From the IMG/VR virus record IMGVR_UViG_3300035212_003113, positions 307,676-371,675 of that record: DNA of 64,000 nucleotides; one strand, 5' to 3'. Shown here piece after piece: positions 33,812-56,776 of the stretch (position 1 is the stretch's first letter; each line of letters begins with the position of its first letter). The notes below the pieces were generated by a model, which did not search any database, was not told the origin of the DNA, and was given only the letters and a program-made list of their open reading frames with translations. A program made the translations under genes and the position numbers.

Positions 33812-33900
33812 GCACTACACCTGTTTAATTAGATTGCACTGCATTGACTCTATTTTTAATATTACTGAGTGATGGAAACCCTGCTCAACAAGAGGAAAAG

Positions 33901-42951: not shown

Positions 42952-43201
42952 CCCTGAAATTTGCAAATTTTCCTAGCGTGCAATCCGCGTGCCACGCTAC
43001 CCCTCCGCCCCTATAACCCGCCAACCCCCGCCCAGGGGTTGCTTTCCTGTAAACGGCCAGGCAGCCGCCCGTAATAAAAGCGGCACAAATCTTGCCTATT
43101 ACTTTCCATTCCTTTCGGTCCTAAAGACATTCTTTCCTGATCCTGACGCGTGAGACAGGGACCCGTCCGTCAACCCCTTCCCCCTGTCTGTGAGGTAAGT
43201 C

Positions 43202-43612
43202 ATGACCACCACCATCACAGCCCGCGCCGCCTACGTTGCTACCGTAACCAAGACCGCGCTGGCGCTGGCCATCATGGCTCAAGAAGAATATCGCAAGGCG
43301 GTAGTGGAGGCGTTTGCCGCCTATGACGGCGGGCGCCCCGGCGCGGCGGCCGTCGCCGCCTTGCGGCGCGTGGCAGTCCGGCCCGCCACCGCCATTGAAA
43401 GCCGCCGCCCGGCGACGGAGACCGCCGCCCTTCTCGTGAACGCCTATGACGGCGGATACGACGCGGCGGAACGAGCCGCACGCCGTTGGGACATTGACGC
43501 CGTCGAGGGCGTCCCCTTCGCCGACCGGGTTGATGCCCGCCCATGGTTCCTTAATGTCATGCCTGATGGGACTGAGATGTGGCAGACGATTCCCGATGAC
43601 GTCGAGTTCTGA
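43202..43612 (+). CDS. cassette gene, Ala-rich hypothetical protein
   Basis: Preceded by element, leader L1 and GAGG; followed by hairpin and T-tract. Confidence 0.7.
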   Translation: MTTTITARAAYVATVTKTALALAIMAQEEYRKAVVEAFAAYDGGRPGAAAVAALRRVAVRPATAIESRRPATETAALLVNAYDGGYDAAERAARRWDIDAVEGVPFADRVDARPWFLNVMPDGTEMWQTIPDDVEF

Positions 43613-43771
43613 TGGCCGGGGCCGACCCTGCCCTGTCTGCCCCGGCTAGCCCGGGGCTTTTCTTTCACCGGGTTTCGAGCCGGGCCGGTCCTAAAAACAT
43701 TATCTTTTGATCCTGACGCGTGAGACAGGGATCAGTCCATCAACCCCTTCCCCCTGTCTGTGAGGTAAGTC

Positions 43772-44005
43772 ATGACCACCGCCGCCGTCACCACCGCCGC
43801 CCTCGCCGTCAACGCCCTCGCCGCCGCCCTCGATGCCGTCCGCGCCGCTCACGCCGCGTCACCGTCCTGCCCGGCGGCGGCCGCCGCGTTGGCGGTTACG
43901 GAGGCCGCGCTGGAACTCGCAAACCAAGGGCTCGACTCCGCCATCGGGGCGGATTCCATCGACTGGCGCCCGGGGCTTTGCGAGAGTCTCGTCGCCGGGG
44001 AATGA
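43772..44005 (+). CDS. cassette gene, Ala-rich hypothetical protein
   Basis: Preceded by element, leader L1 and GAGG. Confidence 0.7.
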   Translation: MTTAAVTTAALAVNALAAALDAVRAAHAASPSCPAAAAALAVTEAALELANQGLDSAIGADSIDWRPGLCESLVAGE

Positions 44006-44032
44006 CCCCGGCCTTCCCTCTCACCCTTCCGA

Positions 44033-44063
44033 CCCCGGCCACGCGCCGGGGTTTTTTTATTTT
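44033..44063 (+). terminator. intrinsic terminator, representative of cassette terminators
   Basis: CCCCGGC-CACGC-GCCGGGG plus T-tract; similar CCCCGGC..GCCGGGG+T hairpins near 44711, 45112, 48650, 49200. Confidence 0.8.
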
Positions 44064-44261
44064 CTGTCCGCCGTCGTCGCACGCCTATGTCACGGTCAAG
44101 GTCTAGGGCGGGGCGTCCCCGGCGCCAGCCCCGGCACGGGCCGGGGCTTTTCTTTTGCCCGGTCTCGAACCAGGCGAAATCCTAAAGACATTATCTTTTG
44201 ATCCTGTATGTCGAGACAGGGATCAGTCCATCAACCCCTTCCCCCTGTCTGTGAGGCCGTC

Positions 44262-44696
44262 ATGACCGCTTTCAATGACACGTTCCCCATCGTCGGCATG
44301 ACTGCCAAGTCCGTTGGACTCTGTAAGGACAAAGACGGCGGGGACGCCGTCCGATTCACGTTCGCGGACGGCAGCGAGTGGTTGATGCACCACTCGCGCA
44401 GCTGCTGCGAGTATGTTGGCCTCACGCAGGTCGACGGCGACCTGTGCGACCTTGTTAACTCCCCGCTCGTCATGGCGGAGTGCGCGGGCGAGATTGTCGA
44501 CGACATCGACGAGGACGGCCACTCGCTCGGAACAAGCGGTTGGACGTTCTACCGCTTCGCCACGGGGAAGGGCTACGTCACCCTGCGCTGGCAAGGCAAT
44601 AGCAACGGGTATTATTCAGTCGAGGTCTCTTTCTATCAGACGAAAGAGTCCGCGTCGATATCGTTCTATGATAACGACGACGACGACAACTACTAA
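44262..44696 (+). CDS. conserved phage hypothetical protein (CCE...WTFY...SNGYYS family)
   Basis: HHSRSCCEYV..VDGDLCDL, WTFYRFATGKGYVTLRWQGNSNGYYS; start re-called after GAGG. Confidence 0.75.
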   Translation: MTAFNDTFPIVGMTAKSVGLCKDKDGGDAVRFTFADGSEWLMHHSRSCCEYVGLTQVDGDLCDLVNSPLVMAECAGEIVDDIDEDGHSLGTSGWTFYRFATGKGYVTLRWQGNSNGYYSVEVSFYQTKESASISFYDNDDDDNY

Positions 44697-44828
44697 CCCG
44701 TAGTGAATCGCCCCGGCCCTGCCGGGGCTTTCGCTTTTCCGGGTTTCTTTCCCGGCCCCGGCCGGTCCTAAAGACATTATCTTTTGATCCTGATGCGCGG
44801 GACAATCCAGTCCCGTTTGGAGGCCGCC

Positions 44829-45089
44829 GTGACCATCCGCCGCACTGCTACCATCGTTGATGCCACCGCCGTCCGCACGGCGGTCATCGCCGCCCGTCTG
44901 CGGGCCGCCTACAGCGAGGCCGGTGACGCTGAGGCGGCCCGCATTCATCGGGGGCAGCTCGACGACGGTACGGTGGTGGTGGGGGTGCTTGACGCCCCTC
45001 CGCCCCCGCCGACGGAAGCGGAGTTGGTAGCGGAGCGCATCCGGGCGATGCGCGCCCGTATGGGTGGCGCGGCCCGCCCGCTCCGGTGA
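44829..45089 (+). CDS. cassette gene, hypothetical protein
   Basis: GTG start after GGAGG downstream of element 44764. Confidence 0.65.
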   Translation: MTIRRTATIVDATAVRTAVIAARLRAAYSEAGDAEAARIHRGQLDDGTVVVGVLDAPPPPPTEAELVAERIRAMRARMGGAARPLR

Positions 45090-45241
45090 ACCCGGCCCGC
45101 CGCTTCTCTCGCCCCGGCCCTGCCGGGGTTTTCTTTTGCCCGGTCTCGAGCCTGGCCCGTCCTAAAAACATTTCTTTTTGATCTTGTATGTCGAGACAGG
45201 GTCCAGTCCGTCAACCCCTTCCCCCTGTCTGTGAGGCAACC

Positions 45242-45604
45242 ATGAAGACCACCCGCGCCACCACCGCCGCCGTCAACGCCGCCATCGGGCGCGCCCACGC
45301 CCTCCTCTCCTTCGCCGCGCAAGCGGCTGAAGACGCCGACCTCGCCGCCACCACCGCCGCCGCCTACGGTGACGGCGGCGAAGCAGCCGCCTACGGAGCC
45401 GCCGCCGCCGCATGGGCGGCCAGCGGCGACGCCGCCGCCCGAAAGGGGGCAATCCTCGCCCCCCTCGTCGAGGGGGGGCGCATCACCCCCGCCCGCGCGG
45501 AGGAGGTGGTCAACGACCCCGCTTACTATCCCCTGGGGGACGAGGTCCTCCAAGACGAAGACGGAGTTTCCTACTCCGTCTGGGGGCACCCGGTTTACTG
45601 GTGA
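45242..45604 (+). CDS. cassette gene, Ala-rich hypothetical protein
   Basis: MKTTRATT after leader L1 and GAGG. Confidence 0.7.
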   Translation: MKTTRATTAAVNAAIGRAHALLSFAAQAAEDADLAATTAAAYGDGGEAAAYGAAAAAWAASGDAAARKGAILAPLVEGGRITPARAEEVVNDPAYYPLGDEVLQDEDGVSYSVWGHPVYW

Positions 45605-45742
45605 CCCCCGCCCCCCCGACCCCGCCCTAACCCGGCGGGGTTTCCGCTTTTCCGCTTTTCTTTCCCGGCCCCGGCCGGTCCTAAAAACATTTCTTTTTGA
45701 TCCTGTTAGATGTCAGAACAACCCGCAACACCCGGAGGCAGT

Positions 45743-45952
45743 ATGTCTAGCTATGACTGCATGTTTGAGCGCCTGAGCGCGGCTTCGGCCGCCGACAAGG
45801 CCGAGACCCCCACCGCCACCACTCCCGAGTGGCGCCTGCGGCCCACCCCGGGCCGGGACATCTGCTACTACTGCGGGACCGACAATGGCCCGCTTAGCGG
45901 GGAGTGCAGCTCCCGGCAAGGGCACGATTGCTATCACTGCGGCGGGAACTAA
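45743..45952 (+). CDS. cassette gene, small Zn-finger-like protein
   Basis: CYYCG...CSS...CYHCGG; GGAGG upstream. Confidence 0.65.
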   Translation: MSSYDCMFERLSAASAADKAETPTATTPEWRLRPTPGRDICYYCGTDNGPLSGECSSRQGHDCYHCGGN

Positions 45953-46092
45953 CTCCCGCCCATCGCCCCGCCCCGCCAGCAAGGCGGGGCCTTGCCGTTT
46001 TCTGCGTTTCTTTCCCGGCCCCGGCCGGTCCTAAAGACATTCTCTCTTGATCCTGTTAGGCGTCAGAACAACCCGCAACACCCGAGGCTCGC

Positions 46093-46425
46093 ATGGCGTT
46101 TGTGAACTTGACCCCCCACACCATCACCGTCGTCGACCAAGCGGGCGCGCCCGCGCTCGTCCTGCCCGCCGACGGGACCGTCGCCCGCGTGGCGACAAAG
46201 ACGGCCGTGGCCGCCGTCGTCGACGGCGTGGAGATTTTCGAAACCTCTTTCGGGGAGGTCGTCGGCCTCCCCGCGCCGGCCCCCGGCGTGACGTGGGTTG
46301 TCTCCGGCCTCGTCGCCGGACACCCGGCGGTGCGGGGCCGTACCGACGTCCTTTCCCCCGGGGCGCTTGTGCGCGGCCCCGATGGTCAGCCGGTTGGCTG
46401 CCGGGGCTTGAGCCGTCCCGCGTGA
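46093..46425 (+). CDS. conserved viral hypothetical protein (NLTPH family)
   Basis: NLTPHTIT...ARV...GLPAP...VVSGLVA...RTDVLSPG..VR..DG...GCRGL. Confidence 0.75.
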   Translation: MAFVNLTPHTITVVDQAGAPALVLPADGTVARVATKTAVAAVVDGVEIFETSFGEVVGLPAPAPGVTWVVSGLVAGHPAVRGRTDVLSPGALVRGPDGQPVGCRGLSRPA

Positions 46426-46539
46426 GCGGCTCCCCGGTCAATCGACCGGGCTGCCCGGCTCGTCACCCGTCCTAAAAACATTATCTTTTGATCCTGTTAG
46501 ACAGAAGCCGGAACGAAACAAACCGGCACGGAGGATACG

Positions 46540-47007
46540 ATGAAGACCCTGACGATTATGCGTGGCGTCCCCGGTAGCGGCAAGAGCACCCTTGCCAAGG
46601 TGCTCGCCAACGTCCCGGGCGTCGAGACGGCTCCCGTGTTTTCCACAGATGATTTTTTCATGGTCGATGGCGAGTACCGCTTCGACGGGTCGAAGCTCGG
46701 GGCCCACCACGCGGCCAACCTCCGCCGCACGGCGGAGGCGATGGAAGCCGGTGTTACCCACGTCATCGTGGACAACACTATGACTCAAGGATGGGAGGCG
46801 CGGGAATATGTCCGCGCCGCGACCTTCCACGGATACAGGGTGCAGTTCGTCGAGCCGCGCACGCCGTGGGGGCGGGACGCGGCGGAGTGCGCCGCCCGTA
46901 ACTCTCACGGGGTTCCCCTCGCCGCAATCGAGGGGATGCTGGCCCGGTGGGAGCCGGACCTCACCCCGGAAGCGTGCTTGAACGCCCGCGCCCCGTGGGA
47001 GGGGTGA
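46540..47007 (+). CDS. P-loop kinase, AAA_33/N4BP2-like
   Basis: MRGVPGSGKST, FSTDDFF, VIVDNT, HGVP...IEGML. Confidence 0.85.
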   Translation: MKTLTIMRGVPGSGKSTLAKVLANVPGVETAPVFSTDDFFMVDGEYRFDGSKLGAHHAANLRRTAEAMEAGVTHVIVDNTMTQGWEAREYVRAATFHGYRVQFVEPRTPWGRDAAECAARNSHGVPLAAIEGMLARWEPDLTPEACLNARAPWEG

Positions 47008-47110
47008 GAGATGCCCGGCGCCGGCCGGGCTCTTTCCCCGGCCGGTCCTAAAAACAGAAAGTTTTGATCCTGATAGGCAGAGCGGCAAACAACACGCCGC
47101 AGGAGGCAAC

Positions 47111-47425
47111 ATGCGTACCGAAACGACCCTCTCTGTTCGCATTGGAATCGTAAATGCCATGGCCCGCCGGGCCGGGGACGCGGGCCTGGCTGCCCGTGCA
47201 GATCAGGTCACGGATCTCGCCTTTGCCTTGCTCGCCATCGGCGGCGACGCCGGGCCGGTGGTGGAGGCACTGGCCAACCTCGCCGGAGAGTTGGAAACGG
47301 CGATGGTACGCCGTGGCTTCAACCGCCGCGAGATTCCGGCGGTTATCCGCCGGGACTGCGAAGCTGCCGGGCTGCCGGTGGCCGATGCCACGGTCACGGT
47401 CCGCAAGCCGGGGGTGGGGCTGTGA
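47111..47425 (+). CDS. cassette gene, hypothetical protein
   Basis: AGGAGG upstream; follows element 47044. Confidence 0.7.
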   Translation: MRTETTLSVRIGIVNAMARRAGDAGLAARADQVTDLAFALLAIGGDAGPVVEALANLAGELETAMVRRGFNRREIPAVIRRDCEAAGLPVADATVTVRKPGVGL

Positions 47426-47568
47426 AGCCGTGGAACATCCCTGACGACGAAACCGATAACCGCCCCGCCCGCATGGGCCGGGGCCGCCCGGCGGGTGAGT
47501 CGCCCCGCCCGACAAAGGGTCGTCCCCGCTCGTGGGATGCCCGCCGAAGGGAAAAGCGCCGCGACTAG
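47422..47568 (+). CDS. small Arg/Pro-rich peptide
   Basis: GTG overlapping the upstream stop; MKPWNIPDDETDN...WDARRREKRRD. Confidence 0.45.
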   Translation: MKPWNIPDDETDNRPARMGRGRPAGESPRPTKGRPRSWDARRREKRRD

Positions 47569-47650
47569 CGGACCGGGGGAGCAATCCCCCGCCCGCCTTC
47601 CGCCGGTCCTAAAAACATTCTTTTTTGATCTTGATAGGCAAGAGGTGAGT

Positions 47651-47749
47651 ATGACCCGCCGCGATGCTGCCGATGCGTTTTTCTTCCTTGCCGGTATGTT
47701 TGTTCTCGTGTTCGTCTATCCCGTCTTGTTCTACGGGATGGCGGGTTAG
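47651..47749 (+). CDS. 32-aa membrane peptide
   Basis: GAGGTG SD; MTRRDAADAFFFLAGMFVLVFVYPVLFYGMAG; has its own element (47605). Confidence 0.6.
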   Translation: MTRRDAADAFFFLAGMFVLVFVYPVLFYGMAG

Positions 47750-47825
47750 TCTCCGGGGCCGGTGCCCCCTTTCTCGCCGGTCCTAAAAACATTCTTTCCT
47801 GATCCTGTTAGTCACGGAGGCAGCG

Positions 47826-48038
47826 ATGAAAGACAAGGCTGGCAAGATGACGGTGACCTTTCCCGACGGCAGCAAGCTGACGGCCATGGCTCCGATGGGG
47901 CTCCCCGGTACGCTGGCCACGGTCGGATGGGAGGCCCACCGCGCCCGGGCGGCGATAGCCGAGATGGACATGACAAGTATTCAAAGGCTCCTGCGCCACT
48001 CCGATGCGCTGCGGGCGCTCCGGCAAGCGGGCTACTGA
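47826..48038 (+). CDS. cassette gene, hypothetical protein
   Basis: GGAGG SD after element 47779. Confidence 0.7.
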   Translation: MKDKAGKMTVTFPDGSKLTAMAPMGLPGTLATVGWEAHRARAAIAEMDMTSIQRLLRHSDALRALRQAGY

Positions 48039-48126
48039 TAAGGAATCGGGCCGGGGCTTGTCCCCGGTGCCGAGCCGGACCGGTCCTAAAAACATTCTTT
48101 TCTGATCCTAATAGGCGGAGGTCAGC

Positions 48127-48291
48127 ATGGCTCAATCGGTTCGGATTCGCATCGCTGGAAACTTCGGGCACGCGCTTTGCCTGTGCCCGGGGTGTTGTCC
48201 CCGTGGCGGCGGGGGCAAGGCGGCCGTCAAGCGCAAGACGGCGCGGGCCGTCCGGCGTTCCGAGCGCCGGGAGATCGAGACGGAGGATTAG
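48127..48291 (+). CDS. 54-aa Cys/basic peptide, missed by the ORF track
   Basis: GGAGG at 48117; MAQSVRIRIAGNFGHALCLCPGCCPRGGGGKAAVKRKTARAVRRSERREIETED. Confidence 0.65.
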   Translation: MAQSVRIRIAGNFGHALCLCPGCCPRGGGGKAAVKRKTARAVRRSERREIETED

Positions 48292-48370
48292 CCGTCCCGG
48301 CCCGGGGAGTCGCATCCCCGGTCCCGAACCTGCCCGGTCCTAAAAACATTATCTTTTGATCTTGATAAGC

Positions 48371-48628
48371 ATGAACAACAACGACAGCCTCACTGCCCGA
48401 TCCAACATCGTCGCGCTCCGGCGCGCCGACCGCGATGCGGCTGCCGCGCGCCGCGCGGGCTACGGAACTGACCGCGCCGCTTGGTGCGGCGTCGATGCCG
48501 GCCTTGCCAAGCTCATGACGGAGGCGGGCCTTTTCGCCCGCCTGCCCGCTGAGGCCCGCGAGCAGTGGGACGCCGGTTGTCTTTCCGCGTCGGAAGCTTT
48601 CGCTATCATCGGCGACGAACTATTTTAG
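48371..48628 (+). CDS. cassette gene, probably leaderless
   Basis: ATG falls exactly on the inferred +1 of element 48336; no SD. Confidence 0.65.
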   Translation: MNNNDSLTARSNIVALRRADRDAAAARRAGYGTDRAAWCGVDAGLAKLMTEAGLFARLPAEAREQWDAGCLSASEAFAIIGDELF

Positions 48629-48772
48629 TTCGCCGCCCACCCTTCCACCGCCCCGGCCCCGCCGGGGCTTTTCTTTTGCCAGGTCTCGAACCTGGCAGCG
48701 GTCCTAAAAACAGATATTTCTGATCCTGTTAGACATCGGAACGGCGGCACGGGCCGCACAACGGAGGATAGC

Positions 48773-49183
48773 ATGGCTTCGCAAAAGCGCTCTCTCGCCC
48801 TTGACATTCGTCTCGCTGGCATCGATTTCCCGTCGGACGTGGGCCGGGCGTTGGAGTTCTACGTTAACGGCAAGCTCCTGTTTCGTGGGGACCGTGCGGG
48901 ATTCGAGCGGCTCTGGGCCGCTCTCCCAAATATCCATGCCGCTTTCGGCGGGATGGAGTCTGAAGGCGTGCGCCCCTTCCGCACGGGGACCGTGCGCTTT
49001 CAGCCGGGCCGCAACCCGCAAGTCGGATACGTCTACACGTTGGAGGACGTGGCCGCCTGCATGCTGTTCCGTCATGAAGTCGAGGAAGCTCTTGACGGGC
49101 GCGGGGCGTTCCTGCCGGACGACGTGCTCGAAGATACTCACTCCTGCGCAGGGTGGGGATGTGTTTGTCACAGTGAGAGCTAG
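48773..49183 (+). CDS. cassette gene, hypothetical protein
   Basis: GGAGG SD after element 48700. Confidence 0.7.
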   Translation: MASQKRSLALDIRLAGIDFPSDVGRALEFYVNGKLLFRGDRAGFERLWAALPNIHAAFGGMESEGVRPFRTGTVRFQPGRNPQVGYVYTLEDVAACMLFRHEVEEALDGRGAFLPDDVLEDTHSCAGWGCVCHSES

Positions 49184-49339
49184 CCTCACAGCGGGCCTCG
49201 CCCGGCCCCGGCCTAATCAGCCGGGGTTTTTTTGTCTTTTTTTGCGGGCGTCATCGGTCCTAAAAACATAACTTTTTGATCCTGATAGGTGTCCAGCGGT
49301 TCCCGGCGCTCCTGCCGGCCCGCCCTGCCCGAGGTTAGC

Positions 49340-49648
49340 ATGACCAACGTCATCGGCATTATTCTCTCTACCGACTACGGCACCCTCGAAATCGAGGGGG
49401 TGGAGGCCGGCGCTCTTGCCCGCCTGCGCCGTGACCCGGTACTGGTCGCGGCCGTGGAGGCGGCCGACGACGACGCCTTTGCGGCTCGTCTCATCGACCT
49501 CCACCCGGAAGTGGCGGACTATGAGGTCCCGTCAACCGACTTCCTGCGGGTGACGCGCCTGCCCGCCGGCACCCGGTACGGGATTGTCATGGGCGACGGG
49601 GATACCGAAGCGCTCGTCTCGGAGCTTGACCTTACCGAGACGGCATGA
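49340..49648 (+). CDS. cassette gene, hypothetical protein
   Basis: GAGGT SD; MTNVIGIIL. Confidence 0.65.
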   Translation: MTNVIGIILSTDYGTLEIEGVEAGALARLRRDPVLVAAVEAADDDAFAARLIDLHPEVADYEVPSTDFLRVTRLPAGTRYGIVMGDGDTEALVSELDLTETA

Positions 49649-49743
49649 CCGTCCGGGCGGGGGCCGGGTTCACCCGGCTCCGCCCCTCTCCTCCCCGGTC
49701 CTAAAAACAGATTCTTTTGATCCTGTTAGACATGGAGGCCACG

Positions 49744-50010
49744 ATGAAGCTGACAAAGAAGGAAGCTCGCAACGTTCGCGTTCTCGCCGCGCAGCACGAC
49801 GGGTTGGACGTGCTCGCCAGTGCGGCGGGCATCGCCCGGGGCGACCGCTCGGTCGCTTACCCGGTGGAGAACCGGGGCCGGGTGGGTTGGTTCAAGCAGG
49901 TGTGCCACCTCGCCGGCCGCGAGACGGGTCGCAACCACTGGGTTGCGGCGGTGGTCCGCGCCAACCGTCCCGCTAACGCGGTGGCGATTCTCCGGGCGCT
50001 CGAAGACTAG
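49744..50010 (+). CDS. cassette gene, hypothetical protein
   Basis: GGAGG SD; an in-frame ATG at 49732 also sits on the inferred +1. Confidence 0.7.
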   Translation: MKLTKKEARNVRVLAAQHDGLDVLASAAGIARGDRSVAYPVENRGRVGWFKQVCHLAGRETGRNHWVAAVVRANRPANAVAILRALED

Positions 50011-50192
50011 CGGGTGACGGGCCGGGGCGCGTAGCCCCGGACCCGAGCCTACCGGTCCTAAAAACAGATTCTTTTGATCCTGTTAGACAGAACGGCGGCG
50101 ACGAAACGATACGATGCGCCGCACATAACGGGTTAAACGTAGCGCCGGTGGTCGGCGGTACGCTAGGCCCTAGAAACAAAAGGGAAAGCACA

Positions 50193-50705
50193 ATGTCGCT
50201 CATCAAGTTTGGTTCCAACACCGGCAACTCTGGCAACACCCTTGCTCTCCCCGCTCCCCGTGTGACGGCGCCCGCCCCTATGGCGCCGATGCCTCTCCCG
50301 GCGCCGGTCGCTGCGACGAGCACGAGCCCGGACATTGCGGCTCTTATGGCGAGGCTTGCGGCGGCCGAGGCGGGGCTCGCTACAGAGAAGGCCCGGGCCG
50401 ATGCGGCCGAGGCTGCCCGTGCGGCGAGTGGCGGTAGCCGTGGATACAGCATGAAGGCGTCGGAGAAGGGCGCTATCTCGATCTACGGCGTCTCTACCAA
50501 GTTCCCGGTGACGCTCTACGCTCCCCACCTCGTGGGAATCATCCGTGATCTGGTTATGACCGGCAAGGCGTCGGCGTTCCTCCGGGAGAATGCGGCGAAG
50601 CTTTCGGTCAAGGTCGACGGCACGGGCCAGGCGGGCACGGGTGCTTCGGAATCGGCAGTGCGCAGCCTTGCCGATGAGCTTGATCGGGTCACCCGCAAGG
50701 CGTGA
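50193..50705 (+). CDS. MSLIK paralogue 1 (coiled coil + SEKGAISIYG..FPVTLY domain)
   Basis: Near-colinear similarity to 53453..53896 and 54869..55297. Confidence 0.8.
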   Translation: MSLIKFGSNTGNSGNTLALPAPRVTAPAPMAPMPLPAPVAATSTSPDIAALMARLAAAEAGLATEKARADAAEAARAASGGSRGYSMKASEKGAISIYGVSTKFPVTLYAPHLVGIIRDLVMTGKASAFLRENAAKLSVKVDGTGQAGTGASESAVRSLADELDRVTRKA

Positions 50706-50826
50706 ACGGTAGGAAGGGGGCCGGGTTCGCCCGGCCCTTTCCTTCCCCGCCGGTCCTAAAAACAGATTCTTTTGATCCTGTTAGACAAGCGGCGACGACG
50801 AAACAAACGCCGCGAATGGAGACGCG

Positions 50827-51219
50827 ATGCGCAAGCAGTCTGCTCGTTCCCTCACCCTTGCTCTTTCCCGTGCCGCTGCTGACGTGCTTGTCGGCAAGCT
50901 GTCAAGCCTTAACTATGGGAATACCACCACGCCGGGGCCGCGTCAAACGGCCATCCTCGCAGATATTGCCCGCCGCAAGGCAACCCGGCGCGGGCGTCGG
51001 GCTGCTACTGCCGCTGAGATTGCGGAAACGCAAGGCATCCCGGTCTCCAACGTGGAGCGGGCGCTGTCCTGTCTCCGGTGCCGTGGCCTTGTCGACCGCC
51101 GGGGCACCCGGTTCGGCCTTACCATCCGGGGGACGGAAGCTGCCGCCCTGTTCTCCGGGGTGCAGGTGCCCGACGGCATCGGGCTGGTCCTGACTGGTCA
51201 TGCTATCCGCAAGGTGTGA
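50827..51219 (+). CDS. winged helix-turn-helix protein
   Basis: RQTAILADI...TAAEIAETQGIPVSNVERALSCLRCRGLV...LTIRG. Confidence 0.75.
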   Translation: MRKQSARSLTLALSRAAADVLVGKLSSLNYGNTTTPGPRQTAILADIARRKATRRGRRAATAAEIAETQGIPVSNVERALSCLRCRGLVDRRGTRFGLTIRGTEAAALFSGVQVPDGIGLVLTGHAIRKV

Positions 51220-51320
51220 CCGTCCGGGGCGGGTCGGGGGAGAAATCCCCCGGCCTTTCCTTCCGGCCCCGGTCCTAAAGACATACTTACCTGATCCTGA
51301 TAAGCACAACGGAGGCCGGT

Positions 51321-51515
51321 ATGAAAAGCAAGTTTTCTTGCCCTACTTGTAAGCAACGCCCTGCGTGTGACTGTGCACCCCCGGACTATGCCCGGATGCG
51401 CCGGGAAAGCGAGCATGCACCGTCGACTGCCGTCTATGTTGCCGCCCTGCAACGTGCATGGGAGCACCGTGCGATGATGCTCGAAGCGGACGAGACCCGC
51501 GACCACCGCGATTAG
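51321..51515 (+). CDS. small Cys-rich protein
   Basis: CPTC...CDC; GGAGG SD. Confidence 0.65.
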   Translation: MKSKFSCPTCKQRPACDCAPPDYARMRRESEHAPSTAVYVAALQRAWEHRAMMLEADETRDHRD

Positions 51516-51533
51516 CGGGTAGGAGGACTGCGC

Positions 51534-51716
51534 ATGAAAGAGCTTTTCTTTTGCATTGATCAGGAACACGTTGATGCCGGGGAGTTCCTGCCCGGCGAGA
51601 TCGGGCACTGGGCAGTGCGCGGACTCCCCGGCGGGGTGCTCGTATTCAACAACCGCTATCTAGCCGAACTGGTGTGGGCGGGTATCGCACCTCACCACGG
51701 CTACGCTCACAACTAG
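51534..51716 (+). CDS. hypothetical protein
   Basis: AGGAGG SD. Confidence 0.65.
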   Translation: MKELFFCIDQEHVDAGEFLPGEIGHWAVRGLPGGVLVFNNRYLAELVWAGIAPHHGYAHN

Positions 51717-51795
51717 GGGATCGGGGCGGACACCTGCCCCTTTCCTTCCCGGTCCTAAAAGCATACCGGGCCGATCTTGATAGCCGGGAGGCACG

Positions 51796-51987
51796 ATGGA
51801 ACGGCTCCGACAAACGCTCCGGGCGTTGTTCGCCCCGCCGCATTATCCGCCCGGCTATGCGCCGGTGTCCGGTCATGCGGTGCATTCATACGAGAAAAAC
51901 TATTTTCTGGCGGACACGCGCCGCCGTGCGAGGGTAGCCTATGAAGCCGCGAAACGCAATCTTGTTGCAGATGATCCTAACCCGTAA
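51796..51987 (+). CDS. cassette gene, hypothetical protein
   Basis: GGAGG SD after element 51751. Confidence 0.65.
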   Translation: MERLRQTLRALFAPPHYPPGYAPVSGHAVHSYEKNYFLADTRRRARVAYEAAKRNLVADDPNP

Positions 51988-52178
51988 AGGCGGGGTCATG
52001 CGCGACCGCAAGGCGGAATCGAAACGCCGGGCGTGCCGGGGGCGAGTCCGCCGGGACCGCGACGACGAGTGACCGGCTGGGGCGCCAGCCCCACCTGGCT
52101 CGCGACCGGTCCTAAAAACATACTCCTCTGATCCTGTATAGCAGAAGCCGGAACGAAACCAACTAGCAGGAGGCAGCT

Positions 52179-52472
52179 ATGTCCAAGGTTCACTTCAACA
52201 CCGGTCGTCTTTATGGTCCCCATGGTCAACGCATCGTGGCTATGCAGTGCCCTTCCGGCGAAGTTGTGTTCGTTGACCGGGACCGGGGCATCCTAGGTGC
52301 CTTGACTGAAAAGTCGGGGGAGATGGGCGCCAACACCGGAGGCGTCAAGGTGTTCCCGCCGTTGACGGCGGCGCAGGTACAGGCGGAAGTCAGTCGCCGC
52401 TATGTCGGCAGCTACGCTTATCAAAGCAGCTCACTGGCCTACCAGTTTGAGGCGCAGCTTCTCGCGGACTGA
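52179..52472 (+). CDS. cassette gene, hypothetical protein
   Basis: AGGAGG SD after element 52108. Confidence 0.7.
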   Translation: MSKVHFNTGRLYGPHGQRIVAMQCPSGEVVFVDRDRGILGALTEKSGEMGANTGGVKVFPPLTAAQVQAEVSRRYVGSYAYQSSSLAYQFEAQLLAD

Positions 52473-52556
52473 GGTCCGGCCCCGCACGCGCGGGGTTCTT
52501 TGCTGAGCCGGTCCTAAAAACAGATTCTTTTGATCTTGTTAGACACGGAGGCGACG

Positions 52557-52850
52557 ATGCGCAGCAGCGAGCAGGTTTTCGTGGCAGTCGTTTCAACCTC
52601 CCGCCACTTTGGCGGGCATGAGGAAGGCGGCTGGTGGTTCGACTGGTCGAATGTAGAAAAGGCGTGGTCTTTTGACAACCCGCGCCGGGCGCGCCGGTTT
52701 GCCCGGCGGCTGGAACGCGAGGAAGCGCATTACGCGCCGCGTCATGACCGCTTCTCGGTTCTCGGCGGGACCGATGTAGAAGTCCGCCGCACGCGGGACC
52801 CGGAAGCACTCGCCGAATGGCAGAGCCGGCAGCGCCCGCGATACGAGTGA
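52557..52850 (+). CDS. cassette gene, hypothetical protein (GGxEEGGWW motif)
   Basis: GGAGG SD; FGGHEEGGWWFD. Confidence 0.7.
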   Translation: MRSSEQVFVAVVSTSRHFGGHEEGGWWFDWSNVEKAWSFDNPRRARRFARRLEREEAHYAPRHDRFSVLGGTDVEVRRTRDPEALAEWQSRQRPRYE

Positions 52851-52945
52851 GCGGACAACGGACCGGGGCCTAGCTCCGGTCCCGAGTCCGGCCGGTCCTA
52901 AAAACATAAACTTTTGATCCTGATAGGTGCCACAACGGAGGCTGC

Positions 52946-53146
52946 ATGCAGGTGACGGAGATTGCGATTGACGGCAACGGCAACGCGACGGTGAACGCCC
53001 GCGAGGGCGGGATGGAAGCGGCGCTCGCCCGCGCCCCGTGGGCGCTGCGGGGATGGGCGGCGGAACGCTGCAATCTGGAAATGACGGGGCGGGAGTACCT
53101 GACCCGCCGCGCCGAGATGCTGCGGGCGCTGGCGGACGTCCGCTAG
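52946..53146 (+). CDS. cassette gene, hypothetical protein
   Basis: GGAGG SD after element 52894. Confidence 0.7.
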   Translation: MQVTEIAIDGNGNATVNAREGGMEAALARAPWALRGWAAERCNLEMTGREYLTRRAEMLRALADVR

Positions 53147-53452
53147 GGGACGGGGTGCCGGGGGGGCACCTGACTCCGGACCGGGCCTAAAAACATACTC
53201 CTCTGATCTTGTCCCGCATACGTGGGAGGTGTGCCATGCGGGGCTAAAAGATTGCAAAACTTATCTGCAAGGGCCAACGGCGAGTCCGGGGGCGGGCGTC
53301 CTATTGTCCGAAAAGCGCGGTCGCCACCGGTCCTAAAAACAGCTTCCCCTGATCTTGTAGGGTGTCCCGGCGACGACGCCGCGACGCAGCGCCGATGACG
53401 CAGCGCCCGATGGTCGGGGGTTGCGGATAGGCTAGAACGCAGGATACAAGCC

Positions 53453-53896
53453 ATGTCGCTTATCAAGCTCCCCGCCCCTGTCGCCGCCACCGTTGCCACG
53501 CCCGTCACGGCGCCGTCTCTGTCTCCTGACATTGCCGCGCTCATGGCCCGCCTCGCAGCGGCGGAAGCTGCGGTCGCGACGGAAAAGGCCCGCGCCGACG
53601 CCGCTGAAAAGGTCAAGGCGGAGTCGCGGGGTTATTCTGCGAAGGCATCGGAAAAGGGCGCGGTTTCCATCTACGGGGTTAGCGCCCGCTTCCCTGTCAC
53701 GCTGTATGCCCCGCACTTTGTCGGGGTGTGCCTTGACCTTATCATGACGGATAAGGGGGTCAACTTCCTGCGTGAAAACGCGGATAAGTTGTCTGTCAAG
53801 GTGGACGGCACCGGGCAGGCCGGGACGGAGGCGAGCCGGGCGGAAGTGCTGCGCCTCGCAGACCGGCTGGCCGGTGCGGTTGCCCGCCTGAAGTGA
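53453..53896 (+). CDS. MSLIK paralogue 2
   Basis: SPDIAALMARL...KASEKGAVSIYGVSARFPVTLYAPH. Confidence 0.8.
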   Translation: MSLIKLPAPVAATVATPVTAPSLSPDIAALMARLAAAEAAVATEKARADAAEKVKAESRGYSAKASEKGAVSIYGVSARFPVTLYAPHFVGVCLDLIMTDKGVNFLRENADKLSVKVDGTGQAGTEASRAEVLRLADRLAGAVARLK

Positions 53897-54868
53897 GGCG
53901 GGCCGGGGGTGGGCGGGGCGACCCGCCTGCCCCTTTTCCGGCGACCGGCGCCCGGCCGGACCCGCCGGGTTCGCCACCGGCCCTAAAAACATACTCGCCT
54001 GATCCTGTAGGACGTACTCTGGTGACAAACCGGGGCGGGCGAACTATTCCTTTTTTTATTGCCCGGCGCGGGGCAGTCCGGTCGTCGGTCCTAAAAACAT
54101 ACGCCGACGATCCTGACAGACGGGTCAACGGGACAACCGGGGGCGGGATAGGTGCGTCGATTGCAAGAAAAAACCGGGGAACAATAACAGGATCGGGAAA
54201 GCCCGTTTTTAGGACCGGGATTGCCTGCAAAGTTTATGCCCCTTTTTATTGTGCCGGTCCTAAAAACAGCTTCTCCCGATCCTGTTACGCGTCAACGCTA
54301 TAGTCGGGGGCGGGGAGAGGTGTATCCGGTGGATTAGTTATGTGGACAAAAGATCCGTTTTGTTTTTGCGTTTTATGATAGCTGACAGGGGCCGGCGGTC
54401 CTAAAGACGGAGTCCGCCGATCCTGTAACCTGCGTCAACGGGACAACCGGGGACGGGTGCGGTGTGCCTAGTGGCTTTGTAATGCTGATGCAATGTTTGC
54501 AGGATCTTTTCTATCTGTTATTAGGATTGCGGCTTCAGTCCTAAAGACGGTGTTGTGTGATCCTGTTGTGCTTTTACTGATTCTGGCTTTCCCTAACGGT
54601 AGAGAGCTGGGAGATAACTTTATAATCTTTAGCAGGCCGCCCGGGCTTGCTGGATAGCTATTGTCTCGCGCGCGTTGATAGGGATGCTTGGTAGGTTGCT
54701 AGATAGTACCTGCTAGAAAGCAGTTTTTCTTGACAGGGGGCGGCGGTCCTAAAGTCGGGGTCCGCCGATCCTGTAGAGCAGAACGGCGGCCCACTACATA
54801 GCCGCAAAGGTGAAGCGTTATACCCGGTGGTCGGGTATCTCGTGGAGCCTAAATACAGGGAGAGCATC

Positions 54869-55297
54869 ATGTCGCTCATCAAGGTCGGAACCCCCGTCGC
54901 CAACAACACCGTCACCTCTGTCAGCCCGGATGTGGCAGCTCTCATGGAGCGTCTCAAGGCTGCCGAGGCTGCGCTGGCAGCAGAGAAGGCCCGTGCCGAT
55001 GCTGCTACCAAGACTAAGGGCGAGGCGCGTGGTTACACCGCCAAGGCCAGCGAGAAGGGTGCTATCAGCATCTACGGTGTGTCCGCTCGCTTTCCTGTCA
55101 CGGTCTACGCTCCCCACTTTGTGGGGATTGCGCTGGACCTCATCATGACCGACAAGGGAGTGGCGTTTCTCCGGGAGAACGCTGATAAGCTCTCTGTCAA
55201 GGTGGATGGTACCGGGACCGCTGGTACCGAGGCTAGCCGTGCCGAGGTTCTCCGGCTGGCTGACCGTCTCGCTGAAGCTGTCGCCAAGCTGAAGTGA
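54869..55297 (+). CDS. MSLIK paralogue 3
   Basis: SPDVAALMERL...KASEKGAISIYGVSARFPVTVYAPH; start re-called. Confidence 0.8.
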   Translation: MSLIKVGTPVANNTVTSVSPDVAALMERLKAAEAALAAEKARADAATKTKGEARGYTAKASEKGAISIYGVSARFPVTVYAPHFVGIALDLIMTDKGVAFLRENADKLSVKVDGTGTAGTEASRAEVLRLADRLAEAVAKLK

Positions 55298-55658
55298 GGC
55301 AGGCAGGTGGGGGCCGGGATAACCCGGCTCCCTTTCCTGTTAGAATGACAGCTTACCCCTACACAGGTGGCAATAATGCTGCGCTTTTTGGAACTTCCTC
55401 CTAGCCGTCCTGACGTCGAGCCTACGTGGACGGAGTGTATTGCGATGGCCTTTCAATGTGCCCGCTTTGCGCCGCTCGAAGCGGACAGGGCACGGGCCAT
55501 GCATGCTGCCTGTAGCTGGTTAGAAAAAGGCTTGTTTTGGCTTGATTGAAGCCACTACCGGGGAGGGGCGACTCTCCCCGGTACCTACAACCTGCAACAC
55601 ACCTGCCAACGGGACAACCGGGGGCGGGCGATCTATTCGCGCGCGCGTTGTGTGCTCC

Positions 55659-56025
55659 GGTCCTAAAAACAGCGATTTCTGATCCTGATACAGTTGCCCC
55701 TCTGTCAGGCAGAGGATTGCAGCGTTCCGGTCCTAAAGACGGGTGTTGCTGATCCTGTAGGGGTTTGCCGATTGCCTGCAATCCTCTGCCCTTGCTCCGT
55801 CCTAAAGACGGGGATCTGTGATCCTGTATCGGTTTGACCTGTGTGTGTCTATATACTTGTTTCTATGTGAAACGCGCCGGTCCTAAAAACAGATTCTTTT
55901 GATCCTGTCGCCCTTTGTCTTTTTGTCAACTTCACGCGGTCCTAAAAACATACTCGCCTGATCCTGTTAGCATTTTCTTTTTTCTAGACTCGCTCCAGTC
56001 CTAAAGACGGTGTGCCCTGATCCTG
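55659..56025 (+). repeat. ORF-free cluster of six 29-bp elements with 30-52-bp gaps
   Basis: Starts 55659, 55729, 55798, 55879, 55938, 55997; gaps 41, 40, 52, 30, 30. Confidence 0.9.
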
Positions 56026-56281
56026 TCCCGGTTGCCCCGCTGTTTGCTTCTTCTCTCTTTTTCTTGTGCCTAGAGCGGCTGGCCTATTGCCGGCAGACAA
56101 CCGCTTTGCAGCGTTTACCCGTCTGAAGAATAATGGGCAAAAGATACCAAGGGAACCGCCACCACCCACCGGGAGCTAAAACCTCTCTTGATGCCGGTAT
56201 TACAGCTGTACTAAGTATTAGACAGCTGCTAGTTGACCCGCGCCGGCTCTAAAGCCGGGTATGCCGCTGTATGGAGTTGTC

Positions 56282-56776
56282 ATGAAACTTGACAAAGTCG
56301 CGCTGTCTTATGCAAGATCCAGCGAAGAAGCTATATCTATACTAACAGAGAGCAGACCAGAGTTTGTCCCGCTGCTGCATCCTGATGATTTGCGTAAGAT
56401 AACAAAATATATTGTTGCCTGCAATAACCATAATCATAAAGTCTTCAAGGTTACTATACCCCTGTTTGCTTGGTACGAGCATAGGATATGGCCAGATCCT
56501 TCTGCCTTTCCTAGCAGCACAGGAATCATTTACTCTATCATGGTGTGGGTAAAGTCTCCAAAAAGAGTTCTGAAAAAGAACTTCACTCTTTTGTATCCAT
56601 TTGATCTGGGTTCTAATGCCGCATTAGACAGGGAAAGCATAAAGGAAATAATCCGATTGAAGGTAGAGAAAATAGAGAGTATGAAGGTTAGCTATAAGGC
56701 TGCCGCTGATAAGCTAAAGAATATGGCAATCGTGACAATCGGGGCCGGGCCTAAAGTCGGGTCCGGCCGATCCTGA
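56282..56776 (+). CDS. MKL-signature protein inside the cassette array
   Basis: MKLDKVAL after GGAG; stop codon lies at the right end of element 56747. Confidence 0.65.
   Translation: MKLDKVALSYARSSEEAISILTESRPEFVPLLHPDDLRKITKYIVACNNHNHKVFKVTIPLFAWYEHRIWPDPSAFPSSTGIIYSIMVWVKSPKRVLKKNFTLLYPFDLGSNAALDRESIKEIIRLKVEKIESMKVSYKAAADKLKNMAIVTIGAGPKVGSGRS

What the first reader, a model, noticed from the sequence alone, without database searches (positions are those of the whole stretch)
53979..54773. Duplicated head-to-head module flanking a G-rich short RNA candidate
Seen: forward element 54087 faces reverse element 54188, and forward 54397 faces reverse 54500 (offsets 101 and 103 nt). Each encloses about 72 nt containing CAACGGGACAACCGGGG (54126, 54436). 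A third copy is at 55607, with variants after 53979 (GACAAACCGGGGCGGGCG) and 54256 (GTCAACG..TCGGGGGCGGGG). The forward copies are YR class, the reverse copies TT class, and there is no ORF. Established: G-rich nascent RNA favours R-loops, and transcription-primed origins exist (ColE1 RNAII, mitochondrial CSBII). Inference: short G-rich transcripts stopped by a facing non-initiating site, i.e. a small-RNA cluster or transcription-primed origin.
Basis: partly seen in the sequence, partly recalled or inferred. Interest (0 to 1): 0.7.

Follow-up and report, generated by a model that had tools for sequence, protein, structure and literature searches.

The report
Phage promoter cluster making hairpin RNAs
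The repeated "elements" are copies of a promoter used by an uncultured 372-kb lake phage, and here they sit in a conserved gene-free island where they precede a new, strongly supported small hairpin (most likely RNA) rather than genes; what the hairpin does is not known.

Summary
The window is the last 64 kb of a 371,675-bp virus record from lake and river metagenomes. The forward and reverse "elements" are copies of a two-part motif, CCTAAARNC, then 10 nt, then GATCCTG. A weight matrix finds 75 copies on the + strand and one on the - strand (54188), none in shuffles. Most sit 15-60 nt before a ribosome-binding site and start codon, often just after a terminator-like hairpin, so I read them as phage promoters. 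The finding lies in a gene-free island with "orphan" copies. The G-rich motif is the 3' half of a 21-nt hairpin: 98.8% of cells paired in 41 distinct copies, and three of six pairs show compensatory changes. Its GACAA loop is the same as in phage P22 boxB. The hairpin occurs five times in the genome, only here. About 20 related contigs have the motif; all 14 that span this position keep one facing reverse promoter 72-104 nt away (72-78 in all but one). The second reverse copy (54500) is degenerate. Best reading: short non-coding hairpin RNAs with one antisense partner, probably bound by a protein. An R-loop origin is neither excluded nor supported. No RNA data could be obtained.

The parts
53183..53211 (+). 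Orphan promoter copy (core 53186-53211), first of the island
   Evidence: Weight matrix 38.4 bits; no start codon with a ribosome-binding site within 200 nt
53273..53293 (+). G-box hairpin copy with a divergent loop (CGAGT); the stem is kept
   Evidence: Covariance model R1 31.7 bits; row in alignment A1
53453..53896 (+). Paralog A gene (147 aa, unknown function), left flank of the island
   Evidence: ORF; 70% nt identity to 54926-55225 (D2); 84 homologues in metagenomes
53979..54008 (+). Orphan promoter copy (core 53982-54007)
   Evidence: 46.6 bits
54017..54035 (+). Variant hairpin: 7-bp stem with the same GACAA loop, followed by GGCGGG
   Evidence: Fold; the orthologous sequence follows promoter 274 in L011
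54087..54115 (+). Forward promoter of head-to-head module 1 (core 54090-54115)
   Evidence: 34.5 bits
54124..54147 (+). G-box hairpin 1 (GUC AA CGG [GACAA] CCG GG GGC) plus the invariant GGG
   Evidence: R1 45.2 bits; covariation counts; present in the minimum-energy fold
54188..54216 (-). Full-strength reverse promoter copy, the only - strand copy in the genome. It faces promoter 54090 across 73 nt.
   Evidence: 39.3 bits; one facing reverse copy in all 14 related loci that span the position, gap 72-78 nt in 13 and 104 nt in one
54256..54284 (+). Orphan promoter copy, back-to-back with the reverse copy (34-nt arms, 88% complementary)
   Evidence: 49.1 bits; inverted repeat I4
54291..54311 (+). 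Divergent G-box copy (loop region CTATAG); the ortholog is L011:410-443
   Evidence: R1 27.8 bits
54397..54425 (+). Forward promoter of module 2 (core 54400-54425)
   Evidence: 43.1 bits
54434..54457 (+). G-box hairpin 2 (GUC AA CGG [GACAA] CCG GG GAC) plus GGG
   Evidence: R1 43.7 bits; a U-A pair replaces C-G at the outer stem
54500..54525 (-). Degenerate reverse copy (CCTAAT..., -8.1 bits), absent from the 90%-identical relative L011
54537..54565 (+). Orphan promoter copy that drives a second kind of structured non-coding unit
   Evidence: 28.5 bits
54583..54654 (+). Two further conserved hairpins after promoter 54540
   Evidence: RNAalifold on 7 genomes: 17 pairs, 5 with compensatory changes; single-sequence fold z = -1.6
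54710..54733 (+). Terminator-like hairpin plus T-run that closes the non-coding units
54745..54773 (+). Promoter of the paralog B gene (95-nt leader)
   Evidence: 43.4 bits; distance to the start codon
54869..55297 (+). Paralog B gene (142 aa, unknown function), lying between the two non-coding clusters
55605..55628 (+). G-box hairpin copy after paralog B (best match in the genome)
   Evidence: R1 48.1 bits
55659..56025 (+). Array of six orphan promoter copies (55662, 55732, 55801, 55882, 55941, 56000) with short T-rich or C-rich leaders. The leader at 56027-56042 is 88% complementary to the G-box.
   Evidence: (D1, I17, I19-21)

Best explanation
**Promoters (inferred from anatomy; no transcript data).** The forward and reverse elements are copies of a phage-specific two-part promoter: ggY-CCTAAARNC, exactly 10 nt, then GATCCTG. 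It serves about 144 kb of co-oriented genes in an uncultured 372-kb freshwater phage. In the GC-rich zone just upstream (window 43-54 kb), each small gene has its own terminator-promoter cassette.

**Non-coding island (shown: conservation and absence of ORFs).** The finding lies in a conserved gene-free island around a duplicated small gene. Here the promoters drive short non-coding transcripts instead of genes.

**Hairpin (shown: covariation and strand specificity; inferred: that it acts as RNA).** The G-rich motif is the 3' half of a 21-nt hairpin, the 'G-box': G-Y-C / AA / C-G-N / loop GACAA / N'-C-G / GG / G-R-C, followed by GGG. In nearly half of the copies it starts 8-12 nt after a promoter. 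The stems covary, while the loop, the AA/GG internal loop and the trailing GGG stay constant. That pattern is typical of a site read by a protein.

**Proposed mechanism (inferred).** Five to seven such hairpin RNAs per genome are made early and bind a phage or host protein, either as decoys or as a loading site on the transcript in the manner of a nut site. The single conserved reverse promoter, 72-78 nt away in 13 of 14 related loci, makes an antisense RNA. This RNA carries the complement of the G-box and can pair with the sense copies or interfere with their transcription.
For: **Promoter reading**
- 75 copies on the + strand and 1 on the - strand, with none in shuffles. All lie in genome 350.8 kb -> end -> 123 kb.
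- The spacer is always 10 nt.
- Most copies lie 15-60 nt before a GGAG-type ribosome-binding site and a start codon.
- At least 10 strong terminator-like hairpins lie 30-55 nt upstream of copies.
- The same motif holds the same positions in about 20 related contigs whose flanks have diverged.

**Hairpin**
- Alignment A1 has 41 distinct copies from the window and 15 related contigs.
- 98.8% of cells are paired. Three of six pairs show changes on both sides (G-C/C-G/U-A, C-G/U-A/U-G, G-C/U-A), 24 cells in all. 0 of 500 shuffles reach this, and slid registers give 41-58% paired.
- In 26 chance matches to the same pattern in unrelated contigs, the N/N' position is complementary in only about 7.
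- U-G pairs make the structure specific to the + strand.
- All 71 covariance-model hits lie on the promoter strand. Only 5 hits occur in the whole genome, all at window 53269-55634.
- 24 of 54 distinct copies start 8-12 nt after a promoter, 11 at about 65 nt and 7 at about 120 nt.
- The GACAA pentaloop is the loop of P22 boxB, which binds the N peptide (PDB 1A4T, as described in PMC12550061).

**Antisense promoter**
- The copy at 54188 scores 39.3 bits.
- All 14 related loci that span this position have one reverse copy facing a forward copy with a G-box in between. The gap is 72-78 nt in 13 and 104 nt in one.

**Other structured units in the island**
- Two further covarying hairpins follow promoter 54540.

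**No coding potential**
-.
Against: - No RNA run holding this phage could be listed, so no transcript, start site or length has been observed.
- The polymerase or sigma factor that reads the motif is unidentified. There were no Pfam hits to T7-like or multisubunit RNA polymerases, and only a weak sigma-like ORF at genome 177,957-178,745.
- About 10 of 54 G-boxes have no promoter within 400 nt upstream. They sit after a gene's terminator-like hairpin and T-run, so as RNA they would need read-through.
- A hairpin on displaced single-stranded + strand DNA would give the same covariation.
- Whole predicted transcripts fold no better than shuffles (z = -0.8 to +1.1).
- No binding protein was found. 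A scan for arginine-rich peptides gave only unverified candidates.
- The flanking paralog protein has no family and a poor structure model.
Confidence: 0.5

Rival explanations
1. Transcription-primed (R-loop) replication origin. Orphan promoters make short G-rich RNAs that stay hybridised to the C-rich template and prime DNA synthesis. The displaced G-rich strand folds into the hairpin. The reverse promoter either primes the other direction or supplies a ColE1 RNAI-like antisense inhibitor.
For: - The geometry fits ColE1: convergent promoters about 100 nt apart, with the antisense RNA covering the 5' end of the sense RNA.
- T4 oriF and oriG are a phage-specific promoter plus a downstream unwinding element, about 100 bp in all (PMC3016281). 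This phage carries T4-like genes: rIIA, topoisomerase II, DNA polymerase.
- The hairpin is specific to the + strand, which is also the strand displaced in an R-loop.
- AT-rich patches (35% GC) lie at 54321-54380 and 54469-54528, and the 55882-56060 promoters have T-rich leaders.
- The island is a conserved gene-free stretch of about 1 + 0.9 kb in all relatives.
Against: - There is no GC-skew switch at the locus. The cumulative minimum is a broad plateau at window 46-51 kb, and skew follows gene orientation across the genome.
- The AT-rich patches are not exceptional. Lower-GC stretches lie inside the gene at 56373-56701.
- R-loop formation at T4 oriF needs no specific sequence. Here, by contrast, the loop, the internal loop and the trailing GGG are invariant, which points to specific recognition.
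- No initiator gene lies adjacent, and no depth data were available, because contigs give flat depth.
Confidence: 0.2
2. Nut-like processive antitermination site. The G-box is a boxB analogue that loads an N-like factor on RNA polymerase, so that it reads through the many terminators of the downstream co-oriented genes.
For: - The GACAA pentaloop is the same as in P22 boxB.
- The hairpin sits promoter-proximal on the sense strand.
- Terminator-like hairpins are frequent between genes.
- More than 100 kb of co-oriented genes follow the island.
Against: - There is no conserved boxA-like sequence beside the hairpin. The 5' flank varies among TTTT, GCGT and TGTG.
- The stem carries an AA/GG internal loop, unlike the plain 5-bp boxB stem.
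- There are five to seven copies within 3 kb, not one per operon.
- In the window, the six-promoter array just before the long operons has no G-box downstream of it.
- No N homologue was recognised.
Confidence: 0.15
3. Functionless debris. Recombination between the near-identical promoter-terminator cassettes deleted the intervening genes, leaving empty promoters and leader stubs. One cassette was inverted by chance.
For: - The cassettes resemble PeSLs, which mediate insertions and deletions in T4-type phages (PMC2839356, PMC4122927).
- The G-box region resembles part of the 95-nt leader of the paralog genes (sequence read directly, D19).
- Assembly graphs break at identical promoter copies.
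- The number and order of units differ among relatives.
- The copy at 54500 is decaying.
Against: - Compensatory changes keep the hairpin in 41 distinct copies.
- The loop and the GGG are invariant.
- All 14 related loci that span this position keep one reverse promoter, with a 72-78-nt gap in 13 of them, in relatives whose marker protein is 62-90% identical.
- Further covarying hairpins lie in the same island.
Confidence: 0.07
4. Double-stranded DNA protein-binding repeats: iterons, or packaging or partition sites bound by a phage protein.
For: - Five to seven direct repeats of about 25 bp lie in one orientation within about 3 kb, many flanked by T-runs.
- T4 oriE has direct repeats of unknown role.
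- The genome has a weak PhuZ/tubulin-like hit.
Against: - Spacing is irregular, at 143-1171 bp (D5).
- One position shows three Watson-Crick alternatives within a single genome, and U-G pairs also occur. This argues for base pairing in a single strand rather than half-site reading by a dimer.
Confidence: 0.08

Closest known systems
PeSL cassettes (promoter-early stem-loop) of T4-type phages (PMC2839356, PMC4122927)
   Same: These are repeated composite terminator-hairpin plus promoter units. They flank small genes of unknown function in a variable region, and near-identical copies are scattered over tens of kb.
   Different: The promoter here is not sigma-70-like. It is two-part with a fixed 10-nt spacer. 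The island of the finding holds cassettes with no gene but with a conserved hairpin, which has not been described for PeSLs.
boxB hairpin of the nut sites of lambdoid phages, especially P22 boxB (PDB 1A4T)
   Same: It has the same GACAA pentaloop. It is a small hairpin on the sense transcript close to a phage promoter, with covarying stems and an invariant loop, as expected for a peptide-binding RNA.
   Different: There is no boxA. The stem is interrupted by an AA/GG internal loop and followed by an invariant GGG. There are five to seven clustered copies, and no recognisable N protein.
ColE1 RNAII/RNAI primer and antisense pair
   Same: Convergent promoters about 100 nt apart, so that an antisense RNA would cover the 5' end of the sense RNA. 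A G-rich stretch lies in the sense RNA.
   Different: The three kissing stem-loops are missing. The G-run lies about 25 nt from the start rather than about 290 nt. Both promoters are the same phage type. No origin evidence exists.
T4 oriF/oriG R-loop origins (PMC3016281)
   Same: A phage-specific promoter with nothing to express downstream, in a phage with T4-like replication genes. The box at about -30 plus a -10-like block resembles the layout of a MotA-dependent middle promoter.
   Different: The DNA directly downstream is G+C-rich and structured rather than an A+T-rich unwinding element. There are many copies instead of one, and no replication data.
Multi-copy protein-sponge small RNAs (CsrB/RsmX-Z type; from my own knowledge)
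   Same: Several paralogous short RNAs, each with its own promoter, present the same hairpin-loop motif with covarying stems.
   Different: The loop motif is different (GACAA, not GGA). They are phage-encoded, the binding partner is unknown, and there is an antisense promoter.

Membership tests
Phage nut site (boxA + boxB) | boxB: short hairpin with a GNRA-like pentaloop | tested here: met
   The GACAA loop occurs in 45 of 54 distinct copies, with GACGA in 5 more. The same loop is in P22 boxB. The stem is supported by covariation, but it has an AA/GG internal loop that boxB lacks.
Phage nut site (boxA + boxB) | Conserved boxA sequence a few nt upstream of boxB | tested here: not met
   Columns 1-4 of A1 and the 45-nt upstream flanks vary (TTTT, GCGT, TGTG, CTAG). 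No shared boxA-like block is present.
Phage nut site (boxA + boxB) | A cognate N-type protein with an arginine-rich motif encoded by the phage | tested here: inconclusive
   A scan for arginine-rich windows gives candidates, such as the 54-aa ORF at window 48127-48291, but many are out-of-frame ORFs in GC-rich DNA and none has a family hit.
ColE1-type primer RNA with antisense control | Antisense promoter facing the primer promoter about 100 nt downstream | tested here: met
   The gap is 73 nt in the window, 72-78 nt in 13 related loci and 104 nt in one. The reverse copy is full strength.
ColE1-type primer RNA with antisense control | Multiple stem-loops in the overlap that allow kissing | tested here: not met
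   Folds of the overlap show only the G-box hairpin. z-scores are -0.2 and -0.6 for the sense strand and +1.1 and -0.1 for the antisense strand.
ColE1-type primer RNA with antisense control | Persistent RNA-DNA hybrid processed into a primer at an origin | not testable with these tools
   No RNA runs could be listed. Contigs give no local depth.
T4 oriF/oriG-type origin | Phage-specific promoter followed directly by an A+T-rich unwinding element | tested here: inconclusive
   The DNA directly after the G-box promoters is G+C-rich. Patches of 35% GC lie 35-70 nt further on, but they are not the lowest in the region. T-rich leaders occur only in the 55882-56060 array.
T4 oriF/oriG-type origin | Compositional-skew switch or strand switch at the origin | tested here: not met
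   The cumulative GC-skew minimum is a plateau at window 46-51 kb, and no switch occurs at 54 kb. The gene-strand switch is at about 43.05 kb.
PeSL (promoter-early stem-loop) cassette | Terminator stem-loop directly followed by a promoter, repeated between small ORFs | tested here: met
   At least 10 terminator-like hairpins lie 30-55 nt upstream of promoter copies in 43-54 kb: 20 found against 10.5 expected. A start codon follows within 15-60 nt.
PeSL (promoter-early stem-loop) cassette | The promoter is a host sigma-70-type early promoter | tested here: not met
   The conserved blocks CCTAAARNC and GATCCTG do not match TTGACA/TATAAT, and the sigma-70 scan finds none at these sites. The strict motif is at chance level in 185,579 bacterial and archaeal genomes, with 5 single hits.
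CRISPR array or solitary repeat unit (RNA anti-CRISPR) | Repeat of 28-37 nt at regular spacing, or matching a known repeat family | tested here: not met
   Spacing is 143-1171 nt (D5). Rfam gives no hit. The motif is found only in this phage lineage in metagenomes. It was not compared with a repeat database.
Intramolecular G-quadruplex | Four runs of at least three G within about 30 nt | tested here: not met
   Most copies have only two such runs (GGGGG and GGG), and part of the first run is paired in the hairpin.

The most novel reading that the evidence does not exclude
The G-box would be a new class of phage RNA element: an array of boxB-like hairpin RNAs, each made from its own dedicated phage promoter and held in check by one antisense RNA. 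The array would capture a host or phage protein, such as a transcription-elongation or immunity factor. Alternatively, it would nucleate R-loops that prime bidirectional replication of a huge phage under ColE1-style antisense control.
Probability: 0.3. Interest if true: 0.75.

Novelty: new variant of a known kind. Interest (0 to 1): 0.55.

Why it matters
Huge phages from lakes are known almost only as sequence, and their transcription signals and non-coding RNAs are uncharted. Three things come out of this work:

- A complete candidate promoter set for about 144 kb of such a genome.
- A PeSL-like cassette architecture outside the cultured T4-type phages.
- A small, strongly supported hairpin motif with no Rfam family. 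It is confined to one conserved gene-free island and paired with a single antisense promoter.

If the hairpin binds a protein, it would be a new phage regulatory RNA with a boxB-like loop. If it marks an R-loop origin, it would be a candidate replication origin in a lineage known only from sequence. Either outcome can be tested directly with RNA 5'-end mapping and depth profiling in samples where the phage is abundant.

Tried and rejected
- **Known RNA families:** Rfam at gathering and at permissive thresholds found nothing. There are no tRNAs in the window; five lie elsewhere in the genome.
- **Cultured or catalogued relatives:**
  - No DNA match among 50,697 phage records.
  - Only remote helicase matches by protein, at 23-24% identity.
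  - No match for the 944-aa protein.
  - IMG/VR scans for both promoter flavours and for the paralog protein were empty.
- **Who reads the promoter:**
  - No Pfam hit for T7-like polymerase, Rpb2 or Rpb1 domains.
  - PHROGs gave no polymerase among 13 large proteins, and five giant ORFs have no family at all.
  - Only a weak sigma-like ORF turned up.
- **Host:** the strict promoter pattern gives 5 single hits in the genome collection, which is chance level.
- **RNA evidence:** no RNA run was listed.
- **Inversion of the enclosed segment:** contigs of four DNA runs show the same arrangement. Their only joints are skips or back-steps at identical promoter copies, and none changes strand. This is weak evidence, because contigs drop rare forms.
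- **Origin signals:** GC skew is uninformative and AT-rich minima are not distinctive.
- **G-quadruplex:** the G-runs are too few and partly paired.
- **Micro-ORFs after the G-run:** read by eye from the listed sequences, their lengths and frames are not conserved. ORFs in the gaps are not conserved either.
- **Wider pairing around the hairpin:** pairing of the GACAA loop with a downstream TTGTC, or of the leader with the 3' flank, holds only in subsets.
- **Flanking paralog protein:**
  - No Pfam family.
  - AlphaFold mean pLDDT is 67.7, with a low-confidence core.
  - The Atlas look-alikes are unnamed.
  - No fold search was run on so weak a model.
- **Largest non-coding gaps:** my crude gene calls could not rank them genome-wide.
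Full report
**Where the window lies.** The window is bases 307,676-371,675 of a 371,675-bp virus record. The exact 127-bp terminal repeat suggests a circular assembly (my inference). Near-identical DNA is present in at least 20 lake and river metagenome runs. The genome carries T4-like genes: rIIA, topoisomerase II, DNA polymerase, a clamp-loader-like ATPase, GroEL, helicases and ribonucleotide reductase. It has no close cultured relative. Almost all genes are on the + strand. The stretch from 43 to 54 kb of the window is unusually GC-rich, at 65% against about 50% elsewhere.

**The observation.**
- The 'elements' are copies of one motif: ggY-CCTAAARNC, exactly 10 variable nt, then GATCCTG.
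- A weight matrix trained on copies outside the finding gives 75 hits on the + strand and one on the - strand in 372 kb, with none in shuffles.
- All copies lie in one contiguous arc, from 350.8 kb through the record's end to 123 kb.
- The - strand hit is the reverse element at 54188, at 39.3 bits. The second reverse element, at 54500, scores -8.1 bits and is a decayed copy.
- The 'TT class' carries no meaning. TT follows the motif in 10 of 58 copies that sit in front of genes.

**What the elements are.** I read them as promoters, for these reasons:
- Most copies lie 15-60 nt upstream of a GGAG-type ribosome-binding site and a start codon.
- In the GC-rich zone nearly every small ORF has its own copy.
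- At least ten copies follow a strong terminator-like hairpin with a T-run by 30-55 nt.
- The motif has two conserved blocks at a fixed distance. The spacer composition is free: AT-rich in one zone, GC-rich in the other.

This is the architecture of the PeSL cassettes of T4-type phages. The box at about -30 plus a -10-like block (GATCCT) also recalls T4 middle promoters. The sequence is not sigma-70-like, and its strict form is at chance level in bacterial genomes. I could not find the polymerase or factor that reads it. There are no recognisable phage RNA polymerases. A weak sigma-like ORF lies at genome 177,957-178,745. No RNA run was listed, so promoter function is inferred and not shown.

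**The island.**
- Between 53.1 and 56.3 kb, fourteen + strand copies are packed together (D1). Twelve of them have no ORF behind them. The exceptions are 53332 and 54748, which precede the two paralogous genes (53453-53896 and 54869-55297; 142-147 aa; no family).
- No ORF in the gaps is conserved.
- Using the paralog protein, and later the G-rich motif itself, I recovered about 20 related contigs from metagenomes. Marker-protein identity to the window is 62-90%.
- They use the same promoter motif.
- On four related contigs with gene calls, gaps of about 1 kb and 0.6-0.9 kb flank the paralog B gene.

**The G-rich motif is a hairpin.** Across 41 distinct copies, the sequence G-Y-C AA C-G-N GACAA N'-C-G GG G-R-C GGG keeps six base pairs in 98.8% of cells.
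- Three of the six pairs change on both sides: G-C/C-G/U-A, C-G/U-A/U-G and G-C/U-A.
- 0 of 500 shuffles reach the observed covariation. Slid registers give only 41-58% pairing.
- Twenty-six chance matches to the same pattern in unrelated GC-rich contigs keep the variable pair complementary in only about seven. This serves as a negative control.
- The loop, the AA/GG internal loop and the trailing GGG are invariant or nearly so.
- U-G pairs make the structure specific to the + strand.
- A covariance model finds 71 copies in the window and its relatives. All are on the promoter strand, and there are none in three loci (two contigs) that carry a homologue of the paralog gene without the island.
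- In the whole 372-kb genome it finds five copies, all at window 53269-55634. A sixth, at 54017-54035, has the same loop on a 7-bp stem.
- 24 of 54 distinct copies begin 8-12 nt after a promoter. Others lie about 65 or about 120 nt after one. About ten sit after a gene.
- GACAA is the pentaloop of P22 boxB, which folds like a GNRA loop and binds the N peptide. I treat this as a lead and not as family membership. There is no boxA, the stem differs, and no N-like protein was recognised.

**The head-to-head module.**
- All 14 related loci that span this position have one reverse promoter facing a forward one, with a G-box between them. The gap is 72-78 nt in 13 loci and 104 nt in one.
- The kind of G-box enclosed, and the distance to the next forward promoter behind the reverse copy, both vary. 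It is therefore the convergent arrangement itself that is kept.
- The window's second module is a lineage-specific partial duplication: 84 nt at 74% identity. Its reverse copy has decayed, and the 90%-identical relative lacks it.
- Contigs from four DNA runs show no inversion.

**More structure in the island.**
- The unit after promoter 54540 holds two further hairpins with compensatory changes across seven genomes. It ends at a terminator-like hairpin.
- After paralog B come another G-box and six tandem orphan promoters with short T-rich or C-rich leaders. One leader (56027-56042) is 88% complementary to the G-box.

**Interpretation.** The best-supported reading is a conserved cluster of short non-coding transcription units.
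- The common product is a protein-type recognition hairpin at the 5' end of the RNA.
- One conserved antisense promoter gives an RNA that carries the complement of that hairpin.
- I put this at about 0.5. Within it, a decoy or sponge role and a nut-like loading role cannot be told apart.
GC skew does not switch here, the AT-rich patches are ordinary, and no depth or RNA data were available. I put it at about 0.2.
- Pure recombination debris is disfavoured by the covariation and by the conserved spacing.
- Double-stranded DNA repeats such as iterons are disfavoured by the irregular spacing and by Watson-Crick alternatives occurring within a single genome.

**Novelty.** The promoter-terminator cassettes are a new instance of a known kind (PeSL-like). 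The G-box hairpin with its convergent promoter has no Rfam family and is confined to this phage lineage in the collections searched. I rate the whole as a new variant of a known kind, of moderate to good interest. Its function remains open and is directly testable.

Noticed in passing
window 43000-54000: An 11-kb zone of 65% GC, against about 50% for the rest of the genome. It is packed with small ORFs, each with its own AT-rich-spacer promoter copy and often a strong terminator. It begins right after the only local strand switch (- strand genes 41091-43024). It looks like a hyperplastic early region.
   Followed up: partly
window 56170-56260; L011:2215-2290; L015:5030-5100; L010:8560-8640: Just upstream of the first gene after the island (56261-56776), the relatives carry repeats of the palindrome TACCGGTA (such as ATATACCGGTATAT). 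The window has one half-decayed copy (CCGGTAT). This looks like a binding site on double-stranded DNA for an operator or initiator.
   Followed up: no
window 54583-54654: Two conserved hairpins with compensatory changes lie in the transcript from promoter 54540. This is a second kind of structured non-coding unit, distinct from the G-box.
   Followed up: partly
window 55708-55722 and 55776-55790: A perfect 15-nt inverted repeat brackets orphan promoter 55732. A read-through transcript would fold the promoter region into a long hairpin.
   Followed up: no
window 56027-56042 and the leaders of promoters 55662-56000; also the leader of the reverse promoter 54188: The C-rich leaders (CCGGTTGCC-like) are complementary to the loop and 3' stem of the G-box (ACAACCGG). 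They could act as anti-G-box RNAs in trans.
   Followed up: no
genome 177,957-178,745 (L009:1351-2139): A 262-aa ORF has weak sigma-70 region 2 and ECF/region 4 signals. It is the only candidate transcription factor found. It lies outside the arc that carries the promoter motif.
   Followed up: partly
window 53453-53896 and 54869-55297: These paralogous 142-147-aa proteins have an invariant core (SEKG..S..G..FP.T.YAPH.VG) and 84 homologues in metagenomes, with no family. They always flank the non-coding island. The AlphaFold model is poor (pLDDT 67.7).
   Followed up: partly
window 10182-11528: A weak PHROG match to the tubulin PhuZ (E = 3e-6). The phage may position its DNA with a tubulin, as some jumbo phages do.
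   Followed up: no
genome 12482-35886: Five tRNA genes (Thr, Met, Ser, Leu, Gln), all on the + strand and inside the arc served by the promoter motif.
   Followed up: no
window 33844-41037 and genome 178,711-186,807; 268,176-306,997: Several giant ORFs (1,529-2,698 aa) have no PHROG family. An unrecognised virion RNA polymerase could be among them.
   Followed up: partly
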